Positions 10,673 through 38,865 of a DNA stretch of 64,000 nucleotides are shown here, piece after piece (the first letter of the stretch is position 1; every line of letters begins with the position of its first letter). The stretch spans positions 186,001 through 250,000 of the forward strand of contig NC_047080.1 of NCBI RefSeq assembly GCF_902459465.1. The letters are read 5' to 3'. The translations under genes and the position numbers were made by a program. This DNA comes from Asterias rubens. Its lineage: Eukaryota. A model generated the notes under the pieces. The model ran no database searches. It was not told the origin of the DNA and saw nothing but the letters and a program-made list of their open reading frames with translations.

Positions 10673-13600
10673 TCATCTGGTCAGCCAGTATTCTTTGGTC
10701 AGTGTGGAGATCTGGCAAGGCATCTGTTTGGCGCCATCTTCGGTACTTTCCCGAAGCGATATGGCATGATTGACACGCACCAAAATATCCAGAAGATGCT
10801 TCTGTCTGGAATACTTCTTGATTCCTTCGCACAGCTCAGAAATGTACCACGTCCCATCATCATTTCGCCAAGCCTTGGTGCCTTTGTGTTAAACAATAAA
10901 AAAAACGAAATTTACTGGGGGCCAGTTTAGGATTTGTAATCATTTGTAAAAAAATAGACATACGGCCCAATTCATTGCTCTGCTTATTTACCCGCTGCAT
11001 TCCGCGCTTCAGATCACCAGTCTTCGTTTACTGTGCAAGCGCCAAACTTCTGCACTAGCTGTAAACAAAGAATGCCTAGTATGTGGATTACGCACAAGCA
11101 CATGTTGAAATTTCCTTCTAACCTGTGAATTAGCAAAACCATGAAATTAGGGCCCTGGCAATGCAAGTGTCTTGAGTTCAAATTCCATCCGAGAGATTTG
11201 CCTGTGAACATTGTTCACAGATCTCAGGAAACTAAGTAAACAGTGCTAATACACATCAGTGCAATGGTAAAAAGCAAATTATATTCTCAACTAATGTAGG
11301 GGTAAGGATTTTGAGGTCACAAGATCTGATTGGAGAAACAAATGCAAAAAAAAACAGTTAAAGGGTAGAGGTTTACCTTTAGATGTAGCATATGAGATAA
11401 GCATATCTGCATTGACAGGCTTTTTGAAAGTTGCTTGGGTAGCTTCATCTGGAGTTTCTTCCCTAGAGCTAGTCTCCATATCATCCGCTTTGTCACGACG
11501 AGGAGCTCTACATGCCTGAATGATAAACACTTTGGGTTTGTCTGTCCACACAAAAGATGCAGAAATGTACATAATTGGAGGCAAGTTCAAGATTCAAGCA
11601 TACAGTGGCAGATTATCGGCCATGGCTAAGTACGCCACAGTTCGTTCTTATTCCCAGCAAACTCATTCAATAAATTCTTGCAAAAATGCACAAAAATCCC
11701 TTTTATATAATGTTACAATATTATCACATATAAAAAAACTACTGCAGAGGCACAGTATATGTCCCTTAATGTGATTAACAAGGGCTAAAACAGGGTTACC
11801 CCTTCACGGTCCATAAGGAAGTAGGCTGGGTATCTGACACCATATGCCTTTGGAATTTACTGCCTAAGCAAGTTAATGAGTCACCAACTCTAGATGTCTT
11901 CAAGAACAAACTAAATGGGGTCACCTTCAGCTAATAATACCCCTCACAAGATACTACAATAAATAACTGCATACTTGCACATATTGATTTTGTTCATGCT
12001 AGTTTGCACTTCAACCAATGTGTGAGTATACTCAATAGGAGGTTTCTGCACAGTATATGAAGATGATGATGATGATGGAAACAAATGTCAAATTGACTTG
12101 AATTGAATCATTCTAATAATAACAACCTACCATTGAGTGCTTTGAGTTCGTCTCCCAAGAAGGGTTTAGTGAGTTCCTCCTCTGTGATGAACTTTTGATC
12201 AATTGTAACAATTCCTTCCTGCAATAATCAACAAGTGTAATTGAAACATTACTTATAATTAATAGGTATATGAGTTTGGTTAAAGGTACCGCACTATTGG
12301 TAGTTACTCAAACTAACTGTTAGCATTAAAAGTTACAATGGAGAGCAATAGAGAGCTGTTGATAGAAAAAATGGCTCCCGCCGAAGGAACATAGTTTTGG
12401 AAAAAAAAGTAATTTCTCATCGAAATGCCTGATGAAGCATTTAATTAGGCATCTAAAAACACACACATCTGGGCGACAAGGGTGTTTCTTCTTTCATTAT
12501 TCTCTTCAAACTTCGATGACCAATCAAGTCCAAATTTTCACAGATTTATTATTTTATGCAAATATGTTGAGATACACCAAGTGAGAATGCTGGTCTTTGA
12601 CATTAACCGAAGGTGTCTAGTGGCTTTCAAGCATAGAGATAACATTGGTACTCACCACAGTAGCTTCTTTTCCCTCGTTGTCTTTCACCACCTCCTGCTT
12701 ACCATGACTACCAAGGATAAAGACAAAACTAGAGTACTTCCCCGTTGCTAGTTTATCTCTTGTTTTGTGAAGAACTTTCAACAGCTGCGTTTTGGTCAAA
12801 TCCTTCTCATAATTACATTTAAAATTCAAGTCAACGCTACCGTCTTCCTCAAACAACGTTTCAATTTTGTCCTTGTCTTTTTCACTTCCTATACAAGACA
12901 AAAATTTTTAAATGTTTTACCACAAATTGACTTTAATTTCAAGCGATTCTTATAAAATATGATAATAATAATTTGTTCTTAAATAGTAAATTTTACAATA
13001 ATGTATCAATGCGCTCAACATTAGTGGTCATTGGGCCAAAAACTTTCCTATAATCTTTCTCAGCTTCCTAAAGACTGAAGATTCTACATCTCTGGGCTGC
13101 CAGCGGGCTGCCATGTCACTCCAGATGTTTTCATACACATTGTCAACCTATACCCTCACAGGTACCCATAATTATACCCCTGGGTGAAGAGAAGCAATTA
13201 TACTCAAGTATCATGTACATAAGTGTCAAGATCAGGTTTTCTTTGAAATACTACTTTACAATCCAAGCTTTAGTGGCCTCAAGGAAGCTGAATTCATAAA
13301 CAAAAATAATAATAGTGGCTTCTTATATAGCGAGCATATCCGTCAGTCAGTGATGCTCAAGCAGTTTTTCCTGCAAGGTGTGACACTACATTTGAAGCAT
13401 AAGACCTACTCCTTTTACATACATTATCATTTACCTTTTCGTCGTGGTTCGCCAGAATTTTCAAAGTTATTTATAAACAATAAATATCCTTTGCCTTTGT
13501 TATAGCATTCTTCTGGATTTAAAACTTTATCACCAGATTCCGAAAGACTAATACCAGATGGCACTGCATCACCTGAAATATACAGGAAATTGTAAGAATA

Positions 13601-15758
13601 AAAGATATTAAATAAATCATAATAAACAACTCATGCACCATCTTTGTCATGCCCCATGTTATCAAAATAAAGTTATTAATAATTACAACATAACTCTGAA
13701 CAGATGTTAAATTTTCATCGGGGGATACTGCATGTTATTTGTTTTTACCCTTGAATATAACAATAATAACAATAATAACCGTATTTATAACGCGCCTTTT
13801 GCCAGAGGATACAAAGCGCCAGGTATTATTACTGCAAGGAGTGGGGTGAATTTTGAGATATGACCTAATCCTTAAGCACCATGTAATGGTTTACAAGGTG
13901 CTGTGGCGCAATATGCTGCCAATCCAGCCAGGAACACCGGGGCGAACCCCTTCTCTTTTCGATAAGTGCACTGGGTTATTTTACATGCGTTTACACAACA
14001 CATTGGACCAACGGCTTTATGTCCCATCCGAAGGACGAAGCAATGGTTATGTGTCTTGCTTAAGGACACAAGTGCCATGGCTGGGGAATTGAACCCACAC
14101 TCTGCTGATCAGAAACACCAGAGTTTGAATTCGGTGCTCTTAACCGCTCGGCCACGACACTCCCTCAACACAATTGAAAGATATTTAGTGGACTCAAACG
14201 TCATCATTTGAACTTTCGTTTCCTTTTTTTTCTTTACAAAGTGAATCTTTCAGTCAATTAAAAAAAATCCCAAGACCACCGAAATTGTTCAGTCCTAAAT
14301 TTACTGGCTCCAGGTCATCCTGGTCAGAACCCTGGTCCAATGTTAAATTATTAAGTAGGATTTGAAACTTTGCATGGTGGAAATACGATATAGAAAGGTT
14401 TGCGGTAACACCATGTAATGACTATCTCTAATGAGTAGGATTTGAAACTTTGCATGGTGGAAATACGATATAGAAAGGTTTGCGCTAACACCATGTAATG
14501 ACTATCTCTAATGAGTAGGATTTGAAACTTTGCATGGTGGAAATACGATATAGAAAGGTTTGCGCTAACACCATGTAATGACTATCTCTAATGAGTAGGA
14601 TTTGAAACTTTGCATGGTGGAAATACGATATAGAAAGGTTTGCGCTAACACCATGTAATGCCTATCTCTAATGAGTAGGATTTGAAACTTTGCATGGTGG
14701 AAATACGATATAGAAAGGTTTGCGCTAACACCATGTAATGACTATCTCTAATGAGTAGGATTTGAAACTTTGCATGGTGGAAATACGATATAGAAAGGTT
14801 TGCGCTAACACCATGTAATGACTATCTCTAATGAGTAGGATTTGAAACTTTGCATGGTGGAAATACGATATAGAAAGGTTTGCGGTAACACCATGTAATG
14901 ACTATCTCTAATGAGTAGGATTTGAAACTTTGCATGGTGGAAATACGATATAGAAAGGTTTGCGGTAACACCATGTAATGACTATCTCTAATGAGTTGGG
15001 GTGGTTCTGAAAAAAACCGTTGGTTTCAACTCACCGTTTCGATCAGTTTGCTCTGATCGTTAAATTGTGAGTTGGGCTACATGATTAACTTGACTTACTT
15101 CTGTCACTCCGGGAATTGTTCACGTTGAGCGGACGGTTTGTTTCCATTACACTTACTGAAGTACATCCAGCGTCTGCTTGGTCTCCTCTCTCCACATAAA
15201 AACCTAGAGATGCAAAAATTAAGAACATTTCTCAGACGCTAAGATTGAAAAATGCATCTCTTTTTAATAATAATATGGATTTATAAAGCACTTCTCTATA
15301 AAACCAAAGCATTGTACATTTGAAAATTGCTCTTTACAAAGTAACTTTCTTTGCTATCAACTATTTTAAGTAACTACCAATAGTGTTCAGCCCCTTTATT
15401 GGGTGATTTTCATATCACATATTTGTTTTTGTAACCTACCTTCTTTTTCCAACTCAGCCTCGGTTGATTCTATTTTAGTCAGAATTTCATCATTTTCACA
15501 TTGCTCAAGGACCTTCTTCAGATTTCTATAATCCACTGTATGTGAGGGGTGAGTTTTCACTTTGAACACCCCTTTGTGCTCCATTTTGTCAAGTAATTTT
15601 TGTGGTGTGTCCAATTTTTCCAATTCTCCAGCCAGGAATCCACCATACTCCTTTGTTTTGACGGTGTTCTTCATTTGATTAAACAGATCTCTATCTATGG
15701 CTTTGGTCAAGTAGACAAGCAAAGCCGAGTGAGCTTTGGGTTTTCCTGTTCGAGACAT
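10673..15758 (-). CDS. Initiator-type caspase with N-terminal death-effector-domain-like prodomain, about 418 aa
   Basis: Exons 15440-15758, 15099-15203, 13435-13572, 12656-12888, 12131-12218, 11377-11541, 10673-10881 (1257 nt, phases match). Motifs GYLLFINNF..RRKG, FVFILGSHG (catalytic His), KPKVFIIQACRA (catalytic Cys), ADMLISYAT, KAWR..GTWYI, KQMP. The acceptor at 15807 implies an upstream 5' UTR exon. The 15099-15203 exon is the least certain. Confidence 0.9.
11851..12077 (+). mobile_element. 5'-truncated CR1/L2-type LINE 3' end
   Basis: Translates as WNLLPKQVNESPTLDVFKNKL, the typical ORF2 C-terminal motif. It is followed by a UTR and a (GAT)n tail at 12062-12077. Confidence 0.65.
12280..12630. 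mobile_element. MITE with TTAAAGG..CTTT(C)AA ends (Kolobok/piggyBac-like TTAA target)
   Basis: Degenerate TIRs TTAAAGGTACCGCAC / GTGTCTAGTGGCTTTCAA. Related fragments near 16260-16313, 26500-26610, 42457-42900 and 46190-46462. Confidence 0.65.
13757..14160 (-). mobile_element. tRNA-derived SINE
   Basis: Minus-strand head GTGTCGTGGCCGAGCGG (A box) and GGTTCAATTCC (B box), a central GTGTCCTTAAGCAAGACAC motif and a (TTA)n-type tail. Related copies at about 210-345, 49080-49340 and 50640-50870; a second SINE type with CAGGTACCCAT..TACCCCT at about 540-750 and 13020-13240. Confidence 0.8.
14355..14997. repeat. 80-bp minisatellite, 8 near-identical copies, in a caspase intron
   Basis: TTTGAAACTT recurs at 14361, 14441, 14521, 14601, 14681, 14761, 14841 and 14921. 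Confidence 0.97.
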
Positions 15759-16400
15759 TTTAGAAGATCACTCCCTCGCAGTTTGGCAGAACTTCAATAA
15801 CAGTGAGCTGTTTAGGAAGAAAAAAAAGATGTCATTATATTTATACATCAAAACAACTACTCAAGCTATCTAGCCCTAACTAAAAGATAGCTTCATTGTT
15901 TTTTGTAAAAATCTTGTTAAAGTGCAAGTCAGAAGCGATCTTGTGTCTTTGGCTGATTGCTTGCATGTCAACGAGGTAACCCCATCAATAGTGGCGATAC
16001 GCTCGACTCCCTCCGCACTTTGGCCCTATACCCGGCCCATGTAGCTTCAGGGTGTTAAAACAATATTTGAATAGAAACCCTAAATTTTAAACCTATTTTT
16101 TTCCCTAAAACTAAAAGACAAAAAGAGGGTGCTCTAGATCTAGCTAGGACTTAAAAAAAAAAATCTTCAGGAAATGAGTCCGGGGGAAAAAATTACTATT
16201 TGTTATTCCAATCTTGCTCTTTGGTTATTCTATGCATGTATGTTTGGACACACCAACCACCAACCAAGTGAGAATCTGGTCTTTGAAAATTACCAAACAG
16301 GTGTCCAGTGCCTTGTTTAGGCATGTTAGGCCTGACATACCAACACTTGACTTGTTAGGGGATGGCACTGGCTGTGACAGTCGAGTCACTCAACATATAC

Positions 16401-19770: not shown

Positions 19771-19818
19771 AAAAGTAAACAACGTTCAACGTTCGTACAC
19801 GATCGATCGGTTTGCAAA

Positions 19819-23906: not shown

Positions 23907-26900
23907 ATGGAGGGAGAAGATGGCGATCTCGTTGCTGCTGCCATAATGGCGATGCAAACAGACGTCGATCCTGGCGACGAAACCACCATCCTTCAAGTCG
24001 TTACCCAGTCTGAATGTGCCGGAGACGAACAGGTCGGTAACCAGATTATGGTTCATTCTTCCGACGGAGAGATAATTGTCCACGAGCATTCGGCAGCGCT
24101 GCAGCAGCATTTGCAAGAAGTGCAGCAACTTCAACATCACCACCACCACCACCACCACCAACAACAACAACCCAATGACCAACAACAACATCAGCATCAA
24201 TCCCTCCACCCCAGTGGAACTGTTGCCCTGAATGAATCTTCTATGACAATAGACACGACATCTATGGGTGTTGATCTTCAGGAAGTCAATGTGATTGAGA
24301 TGCCACTTGCGCAAAGTTCACAGCAGGTTGAGACTTCAGTGGTGCATGATCAACAAGGCTTTACAAAAAGGGTTTTCCCAGTCTCGGTATGAAAAAAATG
24401 ATTTAGTCATGAATTTTAACATTATAAAACACAGCAATAGGCATCGCATAACAATATATAACGGTTTCTGCATCCTGCCACCACTTTTTTTATTCACTAT
24501 GAAATAAATTGTTATCTAATTTACTCAGTCTCAAAAATAGATTTTCCGTTATGGACTTATGGTAAATTAAGTGGTGGCCAGATTGGATGTGGAAATATTT
24601 CCTTATTAATTTAGTAATGATTGATCCTTACACAGTGACATTGTGTTCTTTGACTCCAGGTTACTCAAGCGACACCATTGGAAATCGCGACGGAAGTCCC
24701 AGAGGTTGATGTTTCAGGCATCGATGAGAATGTGTCAAAACTCTGCCTGCAATTTCTCAATGATGTTGAGGAGGTAGGAAAAGACAAGTCATGGCCCAAG
24801 ACGTTAGTGATCGATAGTGAAATTGTACATTATCCACTGTCATGCTATTTATTGCTATCGACTAGCCCAAGTTGGACTCCTCCGTTGGGCACTGACTGAT
24901 GTCCTACACCAGGGCTAGCTATCGACCAGAGTGTACACTAAACCAACTATCAATTATTAAAGTGTACACTATCCACTGACAATCACTGACCTCTTGGGCC
25001 AAGACTAGGAAAAGACCAACATCTGCACTTTTTGTGACCCAACAAAAACATGAAATAACAACCAAAAATTAAAGGTTAATCCATCAATCTGAGTTGCGAA
25101 AAATAGCGAGGGAAAAACAGATATTGTATGCGCTTGTTTTTTTTTATTAGAATAAGATGACCATGCATTCAGACACTGTATTCAGTTGATACTGAAAATT
25201 TGTCTTGCAATGAATTTTATTGCTTTGAGAAATCGCCCCCAGGATTGGTTAAGCTGCACTATCGGTCGAACGCGTGAACCCATTTCTGCACGATCAGTCG
25301 ATCGCGCAAAACTTTTCCTGCACGATCGGTTGATTGTGCAAACCCCATTCCTGCACGATCGGTAGATTGCGCAAAGCCTTTCCTGCACGATCGGCTGATC
25401 ACGTAAAAAAAACTCGTAGCACGATCGGTCAATCGCGCAAAGATGTTCATTGCGCGATCGACCGATTGTTGCCTGATCGACCAGTTGTTGCGCGTTTGAC
25501 CGATTGCTGAGCGACCAATTGATCTATAATAGCTCAGCGCGATCAACAGATCGCGCAGATTGACTGATCGCGCCCAACATAAACACCAAACAGCAAACCT
25601 CTCGCGTACAAACATTGGTTGAACATCTATGATAATGAATTGTACAAATCAAGAAATTGTGATGCAGTAGCTAGCTGACAATACTTACAAATTCTATTCA
25701 CTGTGAAATCAGCAGTTAGCTTGATAGGATTCAAACCCACAACCTGGTAACTGCAAGTCCTACAGTCTTACCAATGGACCTGCAGTGACCACACAACATT
25801 ACTTTGAAGAAAAATGGTTGTTTTTTCTCCAATCTTAAAAATTGTAACCAAACTGGAAGAAAATAGAATTAGCTGGATTGCAAACAACTTACCAACCAAA
25901 ATGGACCGAGGTAATAAATGCAAAAAACTGGAAGAAGAAGTAGTCTGGTTCCTTTTTGGGGAAATCAATGTTTGCATTATAATTACTGCTATGAGATACA
26001 GAAAACAACACCAAGATGTTGGCATTATGCTTAAAGTCCTATTATTTTGTATGTACAGGTAGACGGCAACTACTTGAGAGGTTCTCATGAGGGACCTGGT
26101 ATTAGCTTTGAGGAGTTTCTAAGCAAGTACTTCTGCATCACAGGCACATCATTCGTTGCCGTCAGTAATAGAAGTAGGACCATGCCGTTAACTGGCCAGC
26201 AACGCCAGTCTCGCTACTATGGAAACTGTGAAGGTGAGGAAATGAACAATAAAAGCAGTGTTTATTATGTTGTTTTCATTGTCGACGCTTTTTGTTTAAA
26301 GGGAAGGTATCTGTTGTAATCAATCTTAAAATGTATAACATCGAAAAAACTTTGGTTAGAAGCCTACAGCAGCTTTTTATATTATCTACATTTATATAGG
26401 ATTAAAACTATAAAACCGTTTTAATATCGAACAGTTCCAAAAACCAAAGGTATACTTTGCCTTTCAAGGCAGAATATACTCTTTTTTTTAGTACTTACTC
26501 CACAAGTAAACTACCATTAAAACTTATATGATAAACATCATTGGAGAGCTACTGGTAGTATAAAACATTGTTATAAATGACCTCTTTAAAGAAATGTTGT
26601 TTTAGGGGGTTATTTGTTCACCCACAAATTTTCACTTTATTTTTCTAAAAAACTTGACGACTAATGAAGCTGAAACTTCTACAGGTTAATAGTTTTCAAT
26701 ATAAACCACATAGGAAACTGACTGGGTAAATTTTGAAATGATTTTTGGGGTTGAACAAAGAATTGACCAGAGTGGGATTCGAACCAACGACCTCCGGATT
26801 AACGGCCGGCACGTTAATCCGGATGTCGTTGGTTCGGCACGTTAATCCAGAGGTCGTTGGTTTGAATCCCACTCTAGTCAATTCTTTGTTCAACCCCGAA

Positions 26901-29900
26901 AATCGGTTAATAGTTTTATATACATCTTCATACACAGTGAGTATGGATTTATATCATGGCTAACATTTTATCTGCAAAAGGTATCCAAACCCATATGGGA
27001 ACATCAGGGGGTACCCTCTACCCCCATATTGGACATGGTGTATTTTATATATAACTGCATGGTCGTACTTCTACAACTTACCCAGTCAGTTAATGTTATA
27101 TTACTGATGTCTGTGGATGTGCTTTCTCAGAATAATTGTTTTGTTCAATGATTTTTACAAAACTATGTTCAGGTCGTATACGCTGGGAGGCAAAAGGTGG
27201 CACACTTCCCATTGAGTTTTGTGGGTACCCGTTTAAGATAGAGAGCTCCATGTACCTACATTGCTTACATGGCCCAAAAAGAGTAAGTCTAGTTATGTGC
27301 TAGGGAGTTTTTGGTGTTTTTTAAATTTCTACCTATCTTTTTTCTTTTTTCTTTTTTTTGAAGAGGGGGGGGGAGGCGGTCATTACTACAAATTTTGAAT
27401 TGGAAAGTAGTTCAAAAACCTTCATTCAAAAAATACCCCCCATAAACCATTTGGGGTCAAAGAGTGAACCAATAAACAAGAAAACTGCTAATGATAAAGA
27501 ACTTGTACTCGGATGGAACCAGTGACTTCAGCGTGCTGAACATGATGTTGGTAGGTGATGATACCCTGACTGGACACACCCAAGCCACAAGAAAGTCCAT
27601 TGATCTTATAAAAGCTGGGTTGAGTTTTAATATTTTTATTTGTATTCACTCATGAGATTTTAATAATGGTCAAACACACAAACAAAAGCAACACTTGTTA
27701 CACAATTGTTATTGCACATTGCACTTACTTAACTTAAATTCTTTTTTCTCTGAAGGATCTTCGTCCGAAGGAACCCAAACCTCCCAAAGTTAGTCGAAGA
27801 GGGCGCCCGAGAAGTGCATTGAATAGGAAGTTGGAATGCCCCGCAGTGATCCAAGTGAGAGAGATCAGTGTATACACAAATGAAGGCTACTTCGTTGACA
27901 AGAAAGAGTTCAAGAACTCGAGCAAGCTTCGCTGGGAGAAGCAGAGAATCTTGAAGAAGATCCGAGACGACGAAGGTAACGGTAAGGAAGTAACCACAAC
28001 AAGGAGGCTGTATATTAAGATGCCATATGTGAGAGTTCACTCATCGCTTCATCCGGTCGGCGAAAACTCAGCAGCAAACCAGACCATGGATCAACGAGTC
28101 CTGCAAAAACTGAAGCAGTTGATCTCCAACAATGTGACTAACATCAATGAGATCAAGAAATGCTTGAAGGTGTATGTTGACGACGTCCTCTTCAAGCACA
28201 ACCCTATCGAGAAGAAGCCAAAGCCGTTTAATCGGAAGTTCTATCCTTCCCCGTCTGATGTCCAGCGACAGATTGCTGCGTCTCTGTCGACTAAGTCAGA
28301 GAATACCGACATGTTGGCTCAAAACGTGAAGGCTTGGCAAGCAAGAGGGACTGGGAAATTCTTTTATCGATCTCACCAGTCTGGTTCAGAAGAATCCTTT
28401 TTGTTTGTTCAACAGGAGAGGTGGCAGCAGAGGTTGCTGGAAAGGTACGGAAGCGACTTAGTGATTCTTGATGCAACCTCAAAGTCAAACACCATCCTGA
28501 CCATGGCGACTCCGTTGTACTGCCTCTGCATTCATACCAATGTCAACTACATTGTTGTAGCTGTTTTTCTAGTAGAGAAGGAGACAGTGGCCAACATCAA
28601 GGAAGCTTTAGGTGTTATCCAAAGCTGGAACACCTGGTGGAATCCAAGCTCTTTCATGGTGGACAAGTGCAACATTGAGGTAGCCGCAGTCAAAGAACTA
28701 TTCCCAAATGTGCGCATCTACATAAGTGACTACCACAGGAAACAGTCACTGAACAGGTGGGTCAGTCGGAAGGAGTGTGGTCTGGACTCGGACCAGCAGA
28801 AGAGAGTTCTGGCCATGTTTGACAGAATTGCCTTGGAGCAGAATAATACGTTGTACCAGAGCGCCAAGAAGGAATTCATGAGTGACGAGACAGTAGCCGA
28901 GAACATCGAGTTTCTTGACTACTTGCAGTCAGAATGGTTCTCCTGTCCAGAAACTTGGGCTCATGGATTCCGTGACTATGCCATAGACAACCTCATCAAT
29001 GTAAACAATGGGGAGCTTGCCATGGATCGCTTCTTTCGCTACTCCACGATACCCAAGAGCAGAGACAAGGGTGTCCTCGGCATAGTGACACTCATCGTTG
29101 AGTCCTACATACCGGATGCCTTTCACAAATATCGCAAGAAGAATGCAGCGTGGAAGTACACGAAATTCCCAACAGCAGTCCAGAATGTGCCTGAATATTT
29201 GCGGGAGCGACCGTCACACTTTGTCCGCGAGTGTTTAAAGAACCAGGAAGACGCTGTCACGTACAACAACGTCGACGTTCAGTTGATGGACCCCACACAT
29301 GGAGTATTTCACGTCAGGTCCAAGAAAGGTTTCCACATAACAAGCTTTCTCGGACCGAGCTGCACTTGCAACATGTGGAAGAAGTTCCGCTTCCCCTGCA
29401 AGCATTTCTTTGCGATTTTCCTGCATTTCTACGAATGGGGTTTCCACCGTCTGCCGGAGCTATACATCAACAGTGTTTTCCTGACGCGGGACATCGGAGT
29501 TTTACAAGACCCCAATGCTGAAGCAGCCAGAGTCTCCCAAGAGTACACACCGCTTGAGATCCAAGTGATGATACCAGGAGGTCCAGAGCCTTGCTCGACG
29601 GAGACAGTCGTCAGCACAGCGGAAACCGTTTCAAGCTTCAATCCAATCACCTCCAATCCAGTCAACTTGATCTCCATTCCTGAACTTGAAGACCCTTCTG
29701 CGAAGAGCGCAGAAACCGTCCCTGCCGAAGTTGAAGTTGATCCTCTCCTCGATGGCAAGCAGAGGAATATAGTGAACATTTTTAAGCGAGGTATGGACTT
29801 GATTAATGACATCTCAGACCAGGAGCTCATATCGGAGACAGAGCAGGTTCTAACCCTCATGGTGACGAAGCTACAGCGACGGGTAGTGCACAATCATTAC

Positions 29901-30035
29901 ATGCAGAGTGCATTGCCCTCAATCAAGAGACTTAAACCCAACCCTCCTCAGGAGCCTCAGCAGCTGCCACAAGTTGACCCTAACCAGCAACAAGAACAAG
30001 TAACTATCGATTGCGTAACCAGTTCCTACTGGTGA
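23907..30035 (+). CDS. CaRF-like DNA-binding domain + MULE (Mutator) transposase domain + SWIM zinc finger, about 1052 aa; probable domesticated transposase
   Basis: Exons 23907-24386, 24660-24773, 26059-26233, 27173-27282, 27756-30035 (3159 nt, phases match). His/Gln-rich N-terminus. CaRF-type motifs FCGYPF..HCLHGPKR, KLECPAVI, YIKMPYVRVHSSLH, NRKFYPSPSDV. AT-hook RRGRPR. MULE motifs VILDATSK, FMVD, ISDYH, NVNNGEL. SWIM CTC..WKKFRFPCKHFFA. Confidence 0.88.
25258..25575. repeat. Degenerate CpG-rich repeat (about 31 bp) that flips orientation mid-array
   Basis: CTGCACGATCGG..GATCGCGCAAA units on the + strand up to about 25440, then TTGCGCGATCGACCGAT-type inverted units. Confidence 0.7.
26745..26903. 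repeat. Palindrome made from the tRNA-like part of a dispersed repeat
   Basis: GTTGAACAAAGAATTGACCAGAGTGGGATTCGAACC mirrored by GGTTTGAATCCCACTCTAGTCAATTCTTTGTTCAAC. Linear relatives at about 5850-5980 and 49690-49965. Confidence 0.8.
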
Positions 30036-30540
30036 AAAGAGCTCCCATCATAAGTTGACCCTAACCAGCAACAAGAACAGGTAACTATCGATTGCGTAAC
30101 CAGTTCCTACTGGTGAAAAGTGCCCCCAACCACAAGTGGACTCTAACCAGCAACAAGAACAAGTAACCATCGATTGCGTAACCAGTTCCTACTGGTGAAA
30201 AGTGCCCCCAATCACAAGTGGACCCTAACCAGCAACAAGAACAAGTAACTATCGATTGCGTAACCAGTTCCTACTGGTGAAAAGTGCCCCCAATCACAAG
30301 TGGACCCTAACCAGCAACAAGAACAAGTAACTATCGATTGCGTAACCAGTTCCTACTGGTGAAAAGTGCCCCTAACCACAAGTGGACCCTAACCAGCAAC
30401 AAGAACAAGTAACTATCGATTGAGTAACCAGTTCCTACTGGTGAAAAGTGCCCCCAATCACAAGTGGACCCTAACCAGCAACAAGAACAAGTAACTATCG
30501 ATTGCGTAACCAGTTCCTACTGGTGAAAAGTGCCCCTAAC
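29967..30540 (+). repeat. 82-bp tandem array, 7 copies, spanning the stop codon of the CaRF-MULE gene
   Basis: TAACCAGCAAC recurs at 29981, 30062, 30144, 30226, 30308, 30390 and 30472. Each unit carries TACTGGTGA (Y-W-stop). Confidence 0.97.
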
Positions 30541-33500
30541 CAGAAACTTACTAGGACAAGTATGCCTGGAGAAAAAAAAGGTTTTGCCGTAATGATAAGT
30601 ACAGGGTTAATCACAAAAACTTGTTCTTCATTTATTGATAAACCGCATGTTTTTATACAAAAAAAGATAGTTGTACTGTTTGGCAACCCCAACAATTGTT
30701 TTCTGGATGAAATGATTACTGAATGGTTTTCAGAAATGAGTGAAGTTCATACAAATTTAAACCAAATCAAACTTACATTTTGGTGATGATACATGTAAAT
30801 ATTGGTTAATCACAATTTCCTCGGTAAAATAATGTTTTATTTTTAAGTTATTAATTTTTTTTTAAGTTATTTTTTTTTAGTCAGTTGATTTTTAAAGGGA
30901 ATGCCCCAATTTGTTGACATTTTGTGGACCAGTTGATATTCATTGAAACATTTCACGTCTAATTTTCTCAAGGTACTCAACCCGTGTTGTCTTTCCTTTG
31001 ACAAGTCCGGGTTGCATTGTGGCAATATTTTCAAAAGAAAATAATCACTCTTGAAGCTTCAAAAATTCCTTCCTCCAATTATTCAATGAATTCCCTATCA
31101 TAGTGCATAAGTTTCATATACAAAACATTTGAATCCAAGAAACGATTCATACATGAATCAGTTTCTCGGATTTCTAAGGGTTGGTGACAATTTGCGATTG
31201 CTGCGGCCAGATGCAGTTGGCACCTTTCGTCAACACTAAAAATGGTAGTCTTTGTTCTTGTGACCCGGATAGTTTTTGGCTGTTTCTCAATCAGTAGACA
31301 CTAGAGGGTGTGTTGAGCTGAAACTTTCACAGGTGACTTTTATTGTATCTTTCTTTTAGTGCATCTTAATCAACACTACGATGACACAAACCAAATCAAT
31401 ACCCTCCCTAAAATATGTGGATTTTGAAGCACAAGACTAAACATTTTGCAGCGTAAACTATCGGGTTGCTGATTTTTTTTTATTACAAACAAAAAACTAC
31501 AAAGAACAAGAATTACAATGATTCTTTGTGTAAACAATCAATATAAATCTGCAACAAAGGATTTAAACCACAGCTAAATATAAAATTAAAAACATCAAAG
31601 TCACTAAAACTAAAGGACAAATAATGAAAATTACAAAAAGGCAAAGCTATGTCTCCTTAATGTTTCATATCAGATAGAAATAAATAAGTATTTAGTCAAG
31701 TTTTGCACACAAGTTGAAGATTTGCACAGAAGACTGCTCTATAAATTCTAACACCCCCATGTTCTGACAACCCTATGTACCGACAACCTATGTTCCTAAA
31801 AACTCTTGATGATTTACATGTTAGGGTTAGGTTTCATCGGGGTCTAACCATTTCCACAATTACATGGTATAAAGATGGACATGGTAAACTTCCCCTGATA
31901 TCTTTTTGCCTGAAATACTATAGTTTTTGTAGAGAAAGCAAGATGCTTAGTTTTGGTTTGGGAAAACAGTTAAAACATACATGGGGATTCCAACTGTTTT
32001 CTTCATACTCCGATGATCGATTGAGTTTTTAATTTTAACAGGCTTGTCATTTCATGTACTTGTTGGGTCATAAAGTGTAGATCCTGGTATTTTACAGTTT
32101 AATTACATGCTGCAGAAAATATTTGTGGGTACAACCATGTGTATAAACTTCTTTTGGAGGAGTGGGGTCTCAGCGTTTCAGTATACTCTGCTCTCTTTCC
32201 CTTTAACTCAATGAAGCGTAAAGGCAGTACAAAGTCTATTCCCATTTGATTTCTGCGATGTTTCTATTTTTTAACAGGAAAGTTGTGATGTTCCATGGCA
32301 TATTGTTTGTTATAGGACAGTAGTTCATTGTTATCTCCAATTCTCCTATCAATATGACGAAACCGAGGCTGAGAACACATTGTCTGGTCCCATCTTTCAG
32401 AAATGGCATTATGAACTTTGTCTTTTATGAATGTTGGTGGTCATTACTCCCAAGATGTTACCAGTTTTAACCCCTTAAATTAGTCTGTAAAATATCAAGT
32501 GTTTTTTTATTTGTTGTTTGTTTGTTATTGTGTACCTGTATTTGAATAAAAATACAAATTAATGAGAAAAATTATATACATGACCATCATATTGTAGCAT
32601 TTGTCCTTTCCCGTCCAATTGTGTGAAGGACCCAATATCATGGCTCTGCTTGCTGTAAAGGAAATAATTCCATGCTTGTGCACACTCACTCCAGCGCCCA
32701 AATTCATATAGCTGCTTCAGCAGAAAACACTGCTTTAAAAAAAATCTATGCTTAGCAATAATGAGTAGGATACCAGTGACGAGTTGTACATAATATGACT
32801 TAGTAATTTGGCTGGTAGCCTTGTTCTGGTGAGCATAATCTTGTTTTGCTTAGGTTATTTCTTGAAATAAGCAGCTCTATCAAATTGGGCGCATGTAATA
32901 AGCATCCTTCACTTATACACGTAGTGTAGACATTCAGCCTCTGTCTTGTAAGCGAAGAATGGTGTTGGTTAGCACATAATTAAGCAGTTGGCAGAGCCAG
33001 GAGTTTAAAGCAAAGTTTCTCTACAAACTTTAGTATCAGAAACATCAACACTTATCATTGGTCAGATTGGTATACATGTAACATCACTATGTTCCGACAC
33101 TCCAATGTTCCTTATGTGTTTTCCCAACTCTAACCAAAGCATATAACGTAAATGATCAGGGGTTTTACTTTTGGAACATAGTGTTTTCGAAATAATTAGA
33201 GCAACACAAGATCCTATCAAAACAAAATTGCAAAAAAAACTAAGAATTAAAAAGAAATCAGAATAATCGTCAAACTAATATTTATAATACATGTACATAG
33301 ATACTGTCATTATGAAAATCTTTTCATATGTTGTTGGTTTTTATTGCATTTTTTGTATAAAAGATGAGCAAAGTTTGTTCTTACAAAAGGATTTTTCTTA
33401 ATCTTTTGAAAAAGAAATCTGCATTTTAAATTTGTTTTGTACAATTATGGTGTTGCCATTATTGTCACACTAGCTTGGAACAAAAATTCAGCTCATTATC

Positions 33501-34160: not shown

Positions 34161-37100
34161 CTAATCCGAGTCTGTTATGCAGATGACGTCGGTTGATTCT
34201 GGCTGAAGATCAGTCATGTCTTCAATCTCTGAGTCCGAGTCACTAATGATGATGATAGTCTTTGAGTCCTCTTTATTGTTACTCGCTGGCCTTGGACAAG
34301 TTAGTGACCCCGTACTCTGTGCACTGTTCCTTTGCCACTTTGGTGAGCATTTTATTTTGAGTGGGATTGTACGCTTTTGGGGGGTAATTGGTCGCTTTAT
34401 TTGGGCTTTGTTTCCAGATGCGTCTTGAAACAAGGCTGTAGGCTTGAAAGGCTTCAACGGACTAATTTGAGTTTGCAAGTTAGTAGCTGGGGAGGATTTC
34501 TTAAGGTAGGAGCTGCTGTTACTGACGAGAGTCGATTGGATGCAGATCGGTTTACAACCATCTCTGGTGACTCCACTTCTTATCTGCGGGCCGGGGCTAC
34601 ACTGGACAGAGTTACAAGTACTCCTGGTTTTGGAGACTAACACTTGCCCTGCCTGTGTCGTCTCAGTGCTAGATTTATAGCGCGGATAACGCGATATGAA
34701 GACCTTCCGCACAGGTGGGTCATTTGTGATTGTCTTTTTAAGTTCTGTGCTCCCTTTAAGCGACTGTCCTTGAGTGGAAGCTACTGTGACTTCATGTATG
34801 TCTGGATTAAGATGTACATCAAGGTCTGGCTGGGTGCTGGTAGGGCTGCATGACCCAGTCTCCCTGGGGAGGTTGGCAAGGTTGGTCTCCTTTTCAGGAT
34901 TCTCAGAGCTTAGCTCCGTCTCCGAGTCATCGATGCTCAGTGTGATAGGTGCAGAGGTCTGAAGTTTAACTAGAAAGGTAAATTGTGCAAAGACAAGAGA
35001 TGATATAAGGATACAATTTTATATGTTTGGATCATATAATGCATTTTAAGAAACTTTAAGTTCAAAGTACTGCAGTGACAGAAAAATATTTTACTTTTTA
35101 TACCTCAAAATTGAATATGAGAAGCGTTACTGGATTGTGTATTGTAGACTATTCTTCTTAAAACCGCTCCACATTTTTGATAATATTTTAAAAAATGCTA
35201 TCACCTACTGAAATTAAATGTTCCAGCTTAGTTTTGTTGGTATACAATACAATGTATATTTACAACTAGGATTGAAAGCAACAGCAGCTTGTACAAGATA
35301 CAAAAAATGAATAACATCTGCTGCATTGTCAGAATTAAACAAAGTAGTTAAAGTCCAAATTTAAGACCACTTGGACATCCGTGTAGCCTATCTTGTTTGG
35401 CTGTTATATGGCTCTTGTTTGACATTGGTCTTGCAATAGTCGCCACTACATTTCATTCAATTTTGTTTTAAAGCTCACATGATTTTGTTAGTCTCATTTA
35501 AATTTGTTTCGGTCATTTTGTTTAATTAATATGCACTCTAGACTACACTTTGACCATTCTTAAGTTGAATTTCTACTACTTATTGACCCTTGATAAAATT
35601 GGACGGTTGACCAGCTCTTGCTGCAGGCTGTTACTTTTGCGAAAGTGAATAAGTCTTGCAGCCTAATGAAAACTGAATGATCTTATTTGACCAGTGAATG
35701 CTTAACTGGTGTAATTGAGTTATTCATTTTGATTGTTGAATGATGATTCAATGTAACATTAATTTTCAAACCCATTTGAATGAGCTGGGCATTGAAATTA
35801 ATAGATTTTTGTTGCAATTAGCAGGGAAAACAAACAATAAGATTTATGCCCACCATTCTTTACTCCTGACTGAACCGCTATGATCTTCTGCCGTTTTGGT
35901 TGACTGATAACGAATCCTTCATGTTCATCCTCAAACGCTATGGTCTCTCCCTGAGTCCAAGCTACCTTATGAGGCTTGTGCTGATGTTTGTAGTCTGGTG
36001 ACAAGCTACATACATTTGTTATTAAGAAGGGGGCATGTTTAAGGGCTCTTACAGCTTGCTCAGCAGTGTTGTAGTGAAGGGAAGGTTGCAAGTCTGGTTT
36101 GATGGGAAGTAGTTGTGGTGATTTGATGGAATGTGTTGTGGCTACCTTCACTGCTGCGCCATCATCGTAACAAGTAAACAATCCATTACCAGTTACATCA
36201 ATGGCAGATTTGTAGGGTTTGATGATATCTGAAACATTAGAATGGTCAAGGTTATCGCTGACGACACCACTGTGAAAAGTGGATACCCTTCTAGACAGCA
36301 CACTGCCATTGGAAGAGCCCATGTCCTGGGCATGGACTTGGAAATGCTGTTGCTGACTTAAAGGGTCTGCCAAATTTGGCTGGAGCTCCCCATGAGAAGG
36401 TGCGGTGATGAAGGAATTCACAGTCTGATGGGGAGTTCCTTCTGTTTCCTTAGCGTTTCCTTTGTTCTCATTCTCACTCATTTTCTGCTCCTCTTCGTCA
36501 CTACAATCATTCTTTTGTCTCTTCGATGGCGGTTCGTCTGCTTCGTCGTCGGTGGGAACATCTGATGCCACATCCGATTCGGAATTTTCCGCTGCTTCCA
36601 GGACGATGCCGTTCTTTTCATACTCCTCCTGTCGTTTCACAAACGGCTCGTCGACTTCCTTGAGCTTCTGCAAAGCAACATTTTTATTCTCCAGCAACTT
36701 CTTTTTGAGCTCTGGATCTCTGTCGGAGGGGTCTCTTGCAGTGCTGAAGTCGATCGTAGAGTGAGCACTGAAGTTGAGAATAAAGTCTTGCTGGCGTCTC
36801 TTCTGCAACTTCCGACCAACATCCTCAAAAGCTTCCTGAGCAATGCTGTTGATTTTTCTCCTGTTCAAACCCAAATCTTTCTTTTTATTTGTCTTATAAA
36901 CAGCCTTGTAAACATCAGGGAAGTCTGGAAAGAAATCCTTCTTGTTGATTAGTCTCTCCAACTTCTTGTTGATCTCTGGGAAACGCGTTCCTTCGTAGTG
37001 GATCTTCTGCTCGATCACACGCCCGGTTGATGGGGAACATTCGTTCAACTTACAATACATATTGTACACCTTCATGAAGCGCTTCCTGAGTTGATATTCC

Positions 37101-38865
37101 TGGATGTGGACGGAGTCTTCCTCATCCATCTCATCTAAGGTCAGTTCGCGTTCTTCAAGTTTCTTAATAGCCCTACCAATTCTCTTCAGTATCAACTCTA
37201 GTTTGTTTATCTGTCTCTGTGAGCCTTTTCCTTTATCCTTTTTCTTCTCTTTCCGATCACTTTCTACACTTTTCATCGTCTTTCCATTTCTCTCATCTAG
37301 AGCTATAGTTGCAGGGGTATTAACACTTAGTGACGGCCCCGCCCCTTGATCAATATGTTCTTTCGCTGCATCATCATCATGCATCTCCTCAACCTCAGGT
37401 TGAGGTATGCGATCAGTTTTTAAATATTCAATTAAACTTCCACTGCTGATGGTTTCACAAGTCATCTCAAGATCAGCGGAGCCACCTTCTTCCTCTACTC
37501 TCCTGCATTGCTCCTTCTTGACTATCTGTGCATCATTCTGAGACTCATCATCCGAAACATTTGCTTCCTTCACCGCCTCTTTTCTTAAGTTGTCCGAGGC
37601 TTTCATTAACAAAGTCTTCACATCTTGAATGTGAACGTACACAGATTTCTTTTTGGATTGCAGGTCGGAGATGTGCTGCTCCAGAAGGTTGTGGAATTTT
37701 TCTGACTTGGTGTACTCCTTCCTTGCTTGAACAAATTTGTCCTTAAGAAGCTTGGTGATAGCATTCTGTTGGTTGGTCTTGAGAAGTGGCCTACACACAT
37801 CGATAAACTGAAAAGAGAGAACAATAAATCCTAATGTAAGTTATAAAACAGTATGAGGAAGTGTAACAATAAATTGAACCGTAACGCATACAAGTTGTTT
37901 TACAAATGTCCCACATGGCAGTCCTCTTTTCTATAGAATTTAGAATTTTTAGAATTTGTTAAGCTCTTTCCTGAGTGAGCTGAGGAGGTATATGTGAAAC
38001 ATCTTACTTTCACAGCCAGGTCGGAATGCCAATACGGTAACTTTCTGGAAAGTGACTGGAAAATATTTTGGCATACAGTACAAAAGTGCACAAAATGATA
38101 CAATACACCAATACAAACCTCGCTAGCTTGAGGGGAAAACTTCTTTACTTCTCGAAACATGTCCCAATTATTGTCCAACATTTTATGTCCAATATGTTTG
38201 GTTTTGTTATAGGCTAATTACTTTGCGCTTGTTTGGACAGTGGAAAAAAGAAATGATTGCTCAAAACTGTATTAAGACAATATGGTAGCCATCTTGCCTT
38301 GATTGAACAATAGAAATTTCTATAAATAGAAAATTCTATAAAACAATAGAAATTTTGGAATTTTGTCTTTTAAAAACCCAACAAAAGAACAAGCCAAGCA
38401 CCTGCTTGAAAAGTGAAATTATGTTTTATATTTCACTCGTTATTTTTGCTGTTGAAATCAATACATGTACTTTCATCTTTTAGTAGTTTAGTCAAAATTA
38501 GACATACGCAAAATGTGCATGTTGCTTGAAAAGTCCAAACAACGTTTTTGTATATAACTATTTTTGCTAACTTATATTATAAATAATAACATATAACTAG
38601 AACTACCTCCATCCATCCATTCCATGCTTCTAATTTTAATAATAAAAACTAAACTTTAAAATAAATCCCGTTGCGAGTTTTGACGAAATTCAAATCAATT
38701 CATATCCCCCATTTTCTTTTTAACAATTTCACTCTTAACCGATAAGAAACGTACCTTTTTCAATACATCTTTGTTTGCGATACTTGGAGGTTCAATTTCA
38801 TAAGATACTTCTTCGTCCGAACTACTCATTATTTCAATCACTTCTTCCTCAATTTTAAGCGCCAT
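34161..38865 (-). CDS. DAXX: Death domain-associated protein 6 (H3.3 chaperone), about 957 aa
   Basis: Exons 38755-38865, 35854-37807, 34161-34969 (2874 nt, phases match). N-terminal SIM-like VIEIMSSSDEE, helical bundle FIDVC..SEKFHNLL..VYVHIQDV, histone-binding domain GSQRQINKLE..ELTLDEM..TGRVIEQKIHYEGTRFPEINKKLER..FPDFPDV..VGRKLQKRRQQD, C-terminal VICITDSD-stop. Confidence 0.95.

What the first reader, a model, noticed from the sequence alone, without database searches (positions are those of the whole stretch)
23907..30035. Intron-containing CaRF + AT-hook + MULE DDE + SWIM fusion that looks like a domesticated Mutator transposase
Seen: four short host-like exons (acidic, His8/Gln-rich) splice to a 2.28 kb uninterrupted exon carrying most of a CaRF-like domain and a full MULE/SWIM module, with no TIRs enclosing the gene. 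The first two catalytic Asp positions look intact (ILDAT, MVD). The CxxH motif reads SDYH (Cys to Ser), and the NNxxE motif reads NNGEL, with Glu shifted from its usual position. Knowledge: vertebrate CaRF lacks a transposase domain and belongs to the WRKY/GCM1-like zinc-finger group linked to MULEs, and FHY3/FAR1 and ZSWIM genes are precedents for MULE domestication. Inference: a catalytically compromised transposase co-opted as a transcription factor, possibly representing the state from which CaRF arose.
Basis: partly seen in the sequence, partly recalled or inferred. Interest (0 to 1): 0.7.

Follow-up and report, generated by a model that had tools for sequence, protein, structure and literature searches.

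The report
Starfish gene tamed from Mutator transposase
A single-copy, spliced and expressed starfish gene is a former Mutator-type "jumping gene" enzyme, kept for its DNA-binding parts while part of its cutting site has decayed. It shows that the DNA-binding domain of the vertebrate brain factor CaRF is the standard front end of a whole family of such transposases.

Summary
Window 23907-30035 (+) is a five-exon gene of Asterias rubens (NCBI LOC117303538, "uncharacterized", 1052 aa). All four introns are GT-AG and confirmed by spliced RNA reads.

Domain order:
- a lineage-specific acidic, His8/Gln-rich N-terminus
- a CaRF (Pfam ALS2CR8) DNA-binding domain containing an AT-hook
- a MULE/IS256 RNase-H-like core
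- a SWIM finger

Evidence for domestication:
- It is single-copy in the 418 Mb genome and has no terminal inverted repeats.
- It lies between a caspase and DAXX, as in Acanthaster, with the same exon layout.
- Orthologues occur in Acanthaster (71% identity) and Patiria (66-69%).
- Selection is strongly purifying: pN 0.17 against a saturated pS of 0.76. Within Asterias, codons 195-917 show 19 synonymous and 0 replacement differences.

The active site is partly degraded. D532, D596 and H620 remain, but the family's catalytic Glu column holds L/V (Glu sits one residue earlier) and CxxH reads SxxH.

The idea that this gene is the state from which CaRF arose is not supported. It is an asteroid-specific branch inside a large invertebrate CaRF-MULE-SWIM family, and the genome also holds CaRF-domain loci without a transposase.

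Verdict: a new member of a known kind (FHY3/FAR1-like domestication). The wider CaRF-MULE link is the interesting part. The scan holds an unchecked note of a different (FLYWCH-MULE) candidate elsewhere in this genome.

The parts
23907..24386 (+). Exon 1: start codon, conserved extreme N-terminus, acidic stretch, His8 (from residue 77) and Gln-rich low-complexity region. Lineage-specific.
   Evidence: No Pfam family and no paralogue in the genome. Four of the 5 within-genus differences in exons 1-2 are replacements, all in exon 1.
24660..24773 (+). Exon 2: acidic linker, residues 161-198.
   Evidence: GT-AG borders. Junctions 24386/24660 and 24773/26059 are seen in RNA reads.
26059..26233 (+). 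Exon 3: first beta strands and helix of the CaRF-type DNA-binding domain, residues 199-257. 91% identical to Acanthaster.
   Evidence: The structure model aligns to human CaRF from model residue 2.
27173..27282 (+). Exon 4: continuation of the CaRF-type domain, with the conserved Trp and the first putative zinc-ligand Cys287.
   Evidence: Homologous upstream exons exist in relatives L032 and L033. The Pfam ALS2CR8 match starts at residue 257.
27756..30035 (+). Exon 5 (2280 nt, stop included): rest of the CaRF domain, the MULE core, the SWIM finger and the C-terminal tail.
   Evidence: Junction 27282/27756 is seen in RNA.
27795..27812 (+). AT-hook core RRGRPR (residues 307-312). It lies in the basic insert between the two putative zinc-ligand cysteines.
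   Evidence: Read directly from the sequence. RGRP is kept in Acanthaster and Patiria. Relatives have basic residues here but no RGRP.
27828..28052 (+). Conserved core of the CaRF-type zinc module: K318, C321, H388 and H392, invariant in 25 aligned sequences.
   Evidence: invariant columns; numbering.
28065..28316 (+). Three-helix, homeodomain/HTH-like subdomain at the end of the CaRF domain (residues 397-480).
   Evidence: VIA-align gives Z 5-6.5 to homeodomains and to the HTH domains of TnsB, IstA, Mu, Mos1 and Tc3 transposases. This is weak, at common-arrangement level.
28317..29066 (+). MULE/IS256-type RNase-H-like core with its helical insertion (residues 481-730). D532 (28470-28472), E569, D596 (28662-28664) and H620 are kept. 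S617 replaces the family Cys. E713-L714 (29013-29018) stands where the family has [VIL]-E.
   Evidence: Pfam; alignments. Model pLDDT 86, with TM 0.66-0.73 to FRS/FHY3/FAR1 and matches to ZSWIM3/1/9 and K. lactis alpha3. ISCth4 (named there only as a transposase) is the best solved match.
29349..29426 (+). SWIM zinc finger, CxCx9CxH (C829, C831, C841, H843), all ligands intact.
   Evidence: Pfam SWIM 23.3 bits. The four ligand columns are invariant in 31 sequences. Numbering.
29457..30032 (+). C-terminal tail (residues 861-1052), 64% identical to Acanthaster over the aligned codons of the tail. The last residues (SSYW, NTYW in Patiria) and a KRLK motif are conserved among the starfish.
   Evidence: No Pfam family.
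29967..30542 (+). 82-bp tandem array, 7 copies, 95% matches. Its first unit supplies the last 23 codons and the stop codon of the gene. The other six units lie downstream.
   Evidence: The repeated C-terminal matches are also seen (L005-L010).
11375..15767 (-). Upstream synteny anchor: caspase (Peptidase_C14) gene exons.
   Evidence: tblastn of Acanthaster locus L012 against the window.
35864..37894 (-). Downstream synteny anchor: DAXX gene exon(s).

Best explanation
This is a domesticated Mutator-like (MULE) transposase gene, fixed before the living starfish orders split.

A transposase of the CaRF-MULE-SWIM family lost its terminal repeats and its mobility. It gained a roughly 200-residue acidic, Gln-rich N-terminal extension on two new exons. 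Since then it has been kept as a single-copy host gene between a caspase and DAXX.

The DNA-recognition parts are intact and the most strongly conserved: the CaRF-type zinc module with its AT-hook, the helix-turn-helix-like subdomain, and the SWIM finger. In the active site the third carboxylate has been swapped out of position (family [VIL]-E, starfish E-[LV]) and the neighbouring Cys has become Ser.

The most likely function is a sequence-specific DNA-binding regulator, working like plant FHY3/FAR1 rather than as a cut-and-paste enzyme.

Shown here: gene structure, expression, copy number, synteny, purifying selection, domain homology and motif changes. Inferred: loss of catalysis, and a transcription-factor role.
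For: - Gene model and splicing.
- One copy at both protein and DNA level in the 418 Mb assembly.
- No inverted repeats around the gene.
- Orthologues of 1037 and 1026 aa in Acanthaster and Patiria.
- Same caspase / gene / DAXX order and the same five-exon layout in Acanthaster.
- pN 0.168 against a saturated pS of 0.762 overall. pN is 0.08-0.09 in the CaRF, RNase-H-like and SWIM parts.
- Among 24 listed differences between Asterias samples, 20 are synonymous. Codons 195-917 show 19 synonymous and 0 replacement differences; binomial P about 1.5e-13 against neutrality, computed on the site composition of codons 195-931.
- The CaRF region is the best-conserved part, 87% and 77% identity.
- Domain identification: Pfam; human, rat, cow and mouse CaRF are the top structural matches of the DNA-binding region at E about 1e-13; FRS/FHY3/FAR1, ZSWIM1/3/9, alpha3 and IS-element transposases match the core and ISCth4 is the best solved match.
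- Catalytic columns.
- Long stem branch (1.07) followed by short within-starfish branches (0.07-0.15).
Against: - No binding site, target gene or phenotype is known.
- Four of the five conserved active-site residues of this transposase class (D532, E569, D596, H620) are retained in all three species, and a Glu sits one residue before the canonical position. Residual metal binding or nuclease activity therefore cannot be excluded.
- The model's coordinates could not be inspected, so the active-site geometry is untested.
- dS between the two genomes compared is saturated, so omega is only bounded.
- The within-genus count rests on the differences the reads tool listed; 13 more were not shown.
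- RNA depth is low (about 3-10x) and the tissue is unknown.
Confidence: 0.75

Rival explanations
1. The protein is a domesticated but still active nuclease or recombinase. It would use D532, D596 and the displaced E713 to cut or rearrange host DNA, as K. lactis alpha3 (a MULE-derived mating-type switching enzyme) or RAG1 do.
For: D532, E569, D596 and H620 are conserved in all three starfish despite saturated synonymous divergence. E713 is also conserved in all three. The RNase-H-like core is as constrained as the DNA-binding domain, with pN 0.087. K. lactis alpha3 is among the structural matches.
Against: - The Glu column (62/81 Glu in the family) holds Leu or Val, with no insertion or deletion nearby that could restore the register.
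- The residue before it is hydrophobic in 62/81 relatives, so the starfish Glu occupies a normally buried position.
- Cys has become Ser in C/DxxH. Tyr has become Ser, with a three-residue insertion, right after the first Asp.
- Core conservation is also expected for a scaffold or dimerisation role. My recollection is that this is reported for FHY3/FAR1; it was not checked here.
Confidence: 0.12
2. The gene is the direct orthologue or living ancestral form of vertebrate CaRF, which later lost the transposase part.
For: The Pfam ALS2CR8 match is well over its cut-off. Mammalian CaRF proteins are the best structural matches across the whole 286-residue region. CaRF proteins were not among the 30 listed (best) matches to the MULE-SWIM model, which fits loss of that part.
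Against: - The starfish clade nests with unnamed relatives, two of which (P0004, P0006) keep an intact DDE. It sits on a long private stem, apart from the amphioxus/fish clade.
- Orthologues were found only in asteroids; the next hit is 36-40% identical.
- Its CaRF domain fits the Pfam profile less well than those of mollusc and urchin family members.
- Asterias has about seven other ALS2CR8 loci, one ending without a MULE domain.
- No vertebrate CaRF sequence could be retrieved for a direct tree, so this remains indirect.
Confidence: 0.06
3. It is an immobilised transposon relic with no host function, whose open frame survives by chance or by recent insertion.
For: MULE-derived sequence, and an annotation of 'uncharacterized protein'.
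Against: A reading frame of more than 1000 codons is kept in three species whose synonymous sites are saturated. Introns and flanking genes are shared. There are 19 synonymous and 0 replacement differences within the genus. Spliced transcripts exist.
Confidence: 0.02

Closest known systems
FHY3 / FAR1 / FRS proteins of plants (MULE-derived transcription factors)
   Same: Same overall plan: an N-terminal zinc-chelating DNA-binding domain, a MULE RNase-H-like core and a C-terminal SWIM finger. They are single-copy host genes without terminal repeats. The MULE-SWIM model superposes on FRS6/9/10/11, FHY3 and FAR1 at TM 0.66-0.73 and E about 1e-13.
   Different: Only 12-15% sequence identity, and an independent domestication in a different kingdom. 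The DNA-binding domain is of the CaRF (ALS2CR8) type, not the Pfam FAR1 type; a relative gave only E 0.14 against FAR1. The starfish protein also has an AT-hook inside the DNA-binding domain and a private N-terminal extension.
Vertebrate CaRF (ALS2CR8), calcium-responsive transcription factor
   Same: Homologous DNA-binding region. Pfam PF15299 scores 93.6 bits. Human CaRF residues 213-489 align to the whole modelled region at E 1.7e-13.
   Different: Mammalian CaRF proteins were not among the 30 listed matches to the MULE-SWIM model, whereas the starfish protein carries the complete MULE-SWIM part. About 18% identity. The evidence here points away from orthology.
ZSWIM1 / ZSWIM3 / ZSWIM9 of vertebrates
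   Same: The Pfam ZSWIM1-3_RNaseH-like domain matches over its cut-off, with a SWIM finger and structural matches at E 1e-9 to 1e-13.
   Different: Lower TM (0.42-0.54), and no ALS2CR8 match is known to me for these proteins. Asterias has its own ZSWIM1/3-like gene on contig C7, which sits at the end of a very long branch.
CaRF-MULE-SWIM proteins of invertebrates and fish (all 'uncharacterized' in NCBI: Pecten, Lottia, Pinctada, Branchiostoma, Oratosquilla, Diadema, Lytechinus, Engraulis)
   Same: Same three-domain architecture, 29-40% identity. 2601 cluster representatives at E <= 1e-3.
   Different: Most keep the D, D, E, C and H signature. The starfish gene has lost the canonical Glu and Cys, added two N-terminal exons and an RGRP AT-hook, and is single-copy and syntenic.
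IS256-family bacterial transposases (ISCth4 structure 6xgx)
   Same: ISCth4 is the best solved structural match of the catalytic core, at E 6e-5. From my own knowledge, ISCth4 belongs to the IS256 family.
   Different: Bacterial, with no CaRF domain or SWIM finger, and catalytically active.

Membership tests
Mutator-like (MULE) / IS256 transposase superfamily | RNase-H-like catalytic core with a helical insertion, of MULE/IS256 type | tested here: met
   PF21056 scores 36 bits (cut-off 27.2). PF10551 scores 19 bits, below its 27.6 cut-off. The model (pLDDT 86) matches FRS/FHY3 at TM about 0.7, IS-element transposases and ISCth4.
Mutator-like (MULE) / IS256 transposase superfamily | Complete D-D-E triad, with the Glu in the helix after the insertion (NNxxE) | tested here: not met
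   D532 and D596 are present. The Glu column (62/81 Glu) holds Leu in Asterias and Val in Acanthaster and Patiria; a Glu sits one residue earlier.
Mutator-like (MULE) / IS256 transposase superfamily | C/DxxH motif after the second Asp | tested here: not met
   It reads SDYH. His620 is kept, but Cys is replaced by Ser in all three starfish.
Mutator-like (MULE) / IS256 transposase superfamily | Mobile element: terminal inverted repeats, target-site duplication, several copies | tested here: not met
   No enclosing inverted repeats. One copy in the genome at protein and DNA level.
Domesticated transposase gene (FHY3/FAR1-like) | Single copy, with orthologues at a syntenic position in other species | tested here: met
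   Caspase / gene / DAXX order and the five-exon layout are shared with Acanthaster. A Patiria orthologue is known at protein level only.
Domesticated transposase gene (FHY3/FAR1-like) | Purifying selection on the coding sequence | tested here: met
   pN/pS 0.22 with saturated pS. 20 synonymous against 4 replacement differences within Asterias, and 19 against 0 across the CaRF-MULE-SWIM part.
Domesticated transposase gene (FHY3/FAR1-like) | Transcribed and correctly spliced | tested here: met
   All four junctions are seen in raw RNA-seq reads of a congener, and three of the four (not 26233/27173) in intron-less contigs of run X1.
Domesticated transposase gene (FHY3/FAR1-like) | Acts as a sequence-specific DNA-binding transcription factor | not testable with these tools
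   Needs binding and reporter assays.
CaRF / ALS2CR8 domain family (Pfam PF15299) | Match to the family profile over the curated cut-off | tested here: met
   93.6 bits against a cut-off of 28.9, profile positions 8-231 of 235. Structural match to four mammalian CaRF proteins at probability 1.00.
CaRF / ALS2CR8 domain family (Pfam PF15299) | Orthology to vertebrate CaRF (a CaRF-only protein) | tested here: inconclusive
   Indirect evidence is against it. No vertebrate CaRF sequence could be brought into a tree.
WRKY-GCM1 zinc-finger fold, insert-containing version (Babu et al. 2006, PMC1702500) | Four-stranded sheet with C...C...H...H ligands and an insert between the cysteines, N-terminal to a MULE core and SWIM finger | tested here: inconclusive
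   For: C287; C321, H388 and H392 invariant; a basic insert between the cysteines; and the architecture described in that paper. Structural support is weak: Aft2 Z 4.7 over 75 residues, FRS/FHY3 N-termini at probability 0.18-0.75, and no significant Foldseek match in PDB. The paper does not name CaRF.
SWIM zinc finger (PF04434) | CxCxnCxH ligands | tested here: met
   C829, C831, C841 and H843. The columns are invariant in 31 sequences, and the Pfam match is over its cut-off.
AT-hook | RGRP core flanked by basic residues | tested here: met
   SRRGRPRS in Asterias, GRRGRPRK in Acanthaster, GGRGRPSR in Patiria. Sequence pattern only; binding was not tested.

The most novel reading that the evidence does not exclude
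The CaRF DNA-binding domain is the ancestral N-terminal DNA-binding domain of one large metazoan MULE-SWIM transposon clade, and that clade has been domesticated repeatedly. The candidate events are the starfish gene, a second intron-rich Asterias gene on C17, an echinoid gene shared by Diadema and Lytechinus, and vertebrate CaRF itself by loss of the catalytic part. If so, CaRF, which I recall being described as a calcium-responsive regulator of BDNF expression in neurons, would be a transposase-derived transcription factor. The papers searched here do not say this.
Probability: 0.55. Interest if true: 0.65.

Novelty: new member of a known kind. Interest (0 to 1): 0.5.

Why it matters
- **A clean animal case.** Animal examples of MULE domestication are few and poorly documented compared with plant FHY3/FAR1. 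This one comes with synteny, splicing, selection and a defined pattern of active-site decay, in a clade (including Patiria) where embryos can be manipulated.
- **The origin of CaRF.** The DNA-binding domain of vertebrate CaRF has no origin stated in any paper found here. This work ties it to a living family of transposases, giving a concrete and testable origin for CaRF.
- **A comparative series.** The family supplies proteins with and without the catalytic part. These can be used to ask what the RNase-H-like core and the SWIM finger contribute once cutting is lost.

Tried and rejected
- **Reaching vertebrate CaRF by sequence.** Searches with the CaRF region of the starfish protein and of the Diadema relative returned only close kin. 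No CaRF tree could be built.
- **Patiria coding DNA.** It is not on record, so dN/dS is pairwise only. dS is saturated, and only bounds are given.
- **Solved-structure searches.** The sequence search hit only His-tag-like low-complexity stretches. Foldseek against PDB with the CaRF-region model gave nothing significant.
- **Genomic context of the nearest relatives** (P0004, P0005, P0007).
  - The four P0004 contigs are one collinear locus at about 99% identity, so they show neither several insertion sites nor terminal repeats.
  - There is no caspase or DAXX next to P0005 or P0007, and their organisms are unknown.
  - I therefore could not show an active element with terminal repeats from this clade.
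- **Origin of exons 1-2.** No paralogue in the genome and no Pfam family.
- **Literature.** No paper linking CaRF or ALS2CR8 with transposases was found. Mukherjee and Moroz 2023 report FHY3-like genes in animals but not this family. A ZSWIM family survey mentions MuDR only as a SWIM carrier.
- **Nearby scan note.** A note describes a cassette bounded by inverted modules at 19686-23766. My repeat scan of 18500-24500 found no inverted pair of 30 nt or more. Either way it does not enclose the gene.
Full report
**What is there.** The window is Asterias rubens contig C20:186001-250000.

On the + strand, five exons join in frame to 1052 codons: 23907-24386, 24660-24773, 26059-26233, 27173-27282 and 27756-30035. 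All have GT..AG borders. The product has the same length and reads the same as NCBI's LOC117303538 isoform X1, annotated "uncharacterized protein".

All four junctions appear in raw RNA-seq reads of a congeneric species (run X14). Three of the four (not 26233/27173) also appear in intron-less contigs of a run of the same organism (X1). Depth over the exons is modest, about 3-10x. The last exon is 2280 nt.

**Domains.** Pfam on the spliced protein gives:
- ALS2CR8/CaRF at residues 257-469 (E 2e-26, 93.6 bits, cut-off 28.9)
- ZSWIM1-3_RNaseH-like at 511-614 (36 bits, cut-off 27.2)
- SWIM at 825-850 (23.3 bits, cut-off 19.6)
- MULE at 529-620, below its cut-off (19 bits against 27.6)

*The DNA-binding region.* An AlphaFold model of residues 195-480 (pLDDT 78) has human, rat, cow and mouse CaRF as its only strong matches in Swiss-Prot. 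E is about 1e-13 and the whole region is covered, starting at model residue 2. Exons 3 and 4 are thus part of the CaRF-type domain, not "host-like" additions. An alignment with 24 relatives shows the same thing, and two relatives have an upstream exon homologous to exon 4.

Within this region:
- K318, C321, H388 and H392 are invariant.
- The AT-hook core RRGRPR (307-312) lies in the basic insert between C287 and C321. Its RGRP core is kept in all three starfish.
- The last 80 residues fold as a three-helix, homeodomain-like unit. The best matches are Z 5-6.5 to homeodomains and transposase HTH domains, which is weak.

*WRKY-GCM1 membership.* Evidence is suggestive only. The yeast factor Aft2 is the one beta-sheet match in PDB (Z 4.7). 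The N-termini of FRS and FHY3 proteins and of K. lactis alpha3 appear at low Foldseek probability. Foldseek against PDB gives nothing significant. Babu et al. 2006 describe exactly this architecture for MULE transposases: an insert-containing WRKY-GCM1 domain, then the catalytic core, then SWIM, sometimes with an AT-hook. They do not name CaRF.

*The catalytic part.* A model of residues 480-870 is confident (pLDDT 86, pTM 0.82). Its matches are:
- Arabidopsis FRS6/9/10/11, FHY3 and FAR1 at TM 0.66-0.73
- ZSWIM3, ZSWIM1 and ZSWIM9
- K. lactis alpha3
- insertion-sequence transposases

The best solved structure is the ISCth4 transposase.

**Active site.** I aligned 81 family proteins of at least 550 residues. 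The columns of the first Asp, second Asp, the His of C/DxxH and the Glu hold D 75/81, D 70/81, H 68/81 and E 62/81.

The three starfish proteins keep D532, D596 and H620. They also keep E569, the acidic residue after strand 3.

Three changes are shared by all three species, so they predate their split:
- The Glu column holds Leu (Asterias) or Val (Acanthaster, Patiria). A Glu sits one residue earlier, where 62/81 relatives have Val, Ile or Leu. The alignment is ungapped here, so this is a swap and not a register shift.
- The Cys of C/DxxH is Ser.
- The DATYKT motif reads DATSKS/T and is followed by a three-residue insertion.

The SWIM ligands C829, C831, C841 and H843 are intact. I could not inspect model coordinates, so loss of catalysis is inferred, not shown.

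**Not a mobile element.** The genome holds one copy, both by protein search and by DNA search. No inverted repeats enclose the gene, either close by or within 15-40 kb of the window.

In Acanthaster planci the orthologue (1037 aa, 71% identity) lies between a caspase gene and DAXX. The same two genes flank it here, in the same orientations, at window positions about 11375-15767 and 35864-37894. The Acanthaster gene also has five exons matching the Asterias ones one for one. Patiria miniata has a 1026-aa orthologue at 66-69% identity. In the family tree the three form a 100/100 clade with the species topology.

**Selection.** Between Asterias and Acanthaster, synonymous sites are saturated (pS 0.76) while pN is 0.168. 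By part:

| Part | pN |
|---|---|
| Exon 3 | 0.056 |
| Pfam CaRF span | 0.080 |
| RNase-H-like core | 0.087 |
| SWIM | 0.091 |
| N-terminal exons 1-2 | 0.31 |

A test free of saturation comes from the reads. Of 24 listed differences between the reference and other Asterias samples, 20 are synonymous. All four replacements fall in exon 1. Across codons 195-917 the count is 19 synonymous to 0 replacement. Synonymous sites make up only 21% of sites there, giving P about 1.5e-13 (site fraction and P computed over codons 195-931). Thirteen further differences were not listed by the tool.

Every transposase-derived part, including the decayed core, is under strong constraint. The new N-terminus evolves fast.

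**The wider family.** An exhaustive profile-free search found 2601 cluster representatives at E <= 1e-3 and 150 at E <= 1e-30. Many cover the query from its first 10-25 residues.

The named ones are all "uncharacterized" proteins. They come from Pecten, Lottia, Pinctada, Branchiostoma, Oratosquilla, Diadema, Lytechinus and the fish Engraulis. Their N-termini match ALS2CR8 at E 1e-28 to 1e-39, better than the starfish protein does. The CaRF-type domain is therefore the ordinary DNA-binding domain of a large MULE-SWIM family.

In the tree:
- The starfish clade sits on a long stem (1.07 changes per site) with short internal branches (0.07-0.15).
- Its sister group (99/96) is the unnamed set P0004/P0006/P0007. 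P0004 and P0006 keep the full signature.
- The urchin pair lies elsewhere, with the amphioxus and fish sequences.

The starfish gene is thus a lineage-specific domestication and not the stem of CaRF. Asterias also has about seven other ALS2CR8 loci. These include an open frame on C21 that ends without a MULE domain, and a second multi-exon CaRF-MULE-SWIM gene on C17.

I could not retrieve a vertebrate CaRF sequence, so the direct tree is missing.

**Mechanism.** I read the protein as a DNA-binding regulator built on a retired transposase. The zinc module, AT-hook and HTH-like unit would recognise DNA. The RNase-H-like core and SWIM finger would be kept as a scaffold; FHY3/FAR1 are, from my recollection, reported to need these parts for dimerisation and activation (not checked here). 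The acidic, Gln-rich N-terminus would be a candidate activation region.

Confidence is about 0.93 for domestication and about 0.75 for the full statement.

The main rival, at about 0.12, is that the retained D, E, D, H residues and the displaced Glu still support a nuclease activity used by the host.

**Novelty.** The gene is annotated but unnamed, and its kind (a MULE-derived host gene) is well known from plants. I found no paper linking CaRF or ALS2CR8 with transposases. One survey of transposon-derived factors in animals reports FHY3-like genes but not this family.

The gene itself is a new member of a known kind. The family-level link to CaRF is the more interesting lead.

Noticed in passing
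window 29967-30542: An 82-bp tandem array of 7 copies at 95% matches. Its first unit is the last 23 codons plus the stop codon of the gene, so the C-terminal coding end has been duplicated six more times into the 3' flank. Whether the array is in the transcript, or is polymorphic, was not examined.
   Followed up: partly
window 26728-26916 (intron 3): A hairpin with 77-nt arms (88% complementary) containing tRNA-like sequence. RNA and contig depth here is hundreds to tens of thousands of times that of the exons, with many joints and loose ends. It looks like a highly repeated SINE- or MITE-like element. Other repeats in introns 2-3 (about 24900-25900) also show very high depth.
   Followed up: partly
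G000:C17:477708-481067 (L026, L034, L035): A second, multi-exon CaRF-MULE-SWIM gene in Asterias, about 31% identical to this one. It decays in a different way: D and D kept, NNGIE kept, but C/DxxH reads SDIR (both Cys and His lost). SWIM ligands are intact. Possibly another domesticated copy.
   Followed up: partly
P0021 (Diadema) and P0171 (Lytechinus): Sea urchins of two orders share a CaRF-MULE-SWIM protein (56% identity overall, 73% in the CaRF region). It lacks the catalytic Glu (Arg or Lys there) and has an altered C/DxxH. It lies in a different clade from the starfish gene, so it looks like an independent domestication in echinoids.
   Followed up: partly
G000:C7:7981564-7983066 (L025:1321-2823): A 500-codon open frame with a strong ZSWIM1-3_RNaseH-like match (95.6 bits) and a SWIM-like CxC...CxH. 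It appears to be a starfish ZSWIM1/3-like gene, very distant from the gene studied here.
   Followed up: no
G000:C21:12611440-12612306 (L013:1480-2346): A 288-codon open frame with the best ALS2CR8 match in the genome (73 bits). It ends without any MULE domain and is a candidate CaRF-only gene. A reverse-transcriptase-like fragment lies just upstream.
   Followed up: no
L032 and L033 (metagenome-assembly contigs of unknown eukaryotes): The closest non-starfish relatives P0005 and P0007 also have an upstream exon homologous to starfish exon 4, so an intron near this position may predate the domestication. P0007 has itself lost the second Asp (Gly) and the Glu (Lys).
   Followed up: partly
window 17057-18066: A GC-rich block (49% GC in 16-18 kb) with several inverted repeats built from a short 'GTCGCCCCC'-type motif. 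It lies between the caspase and the gene studied.
   Followed up: no
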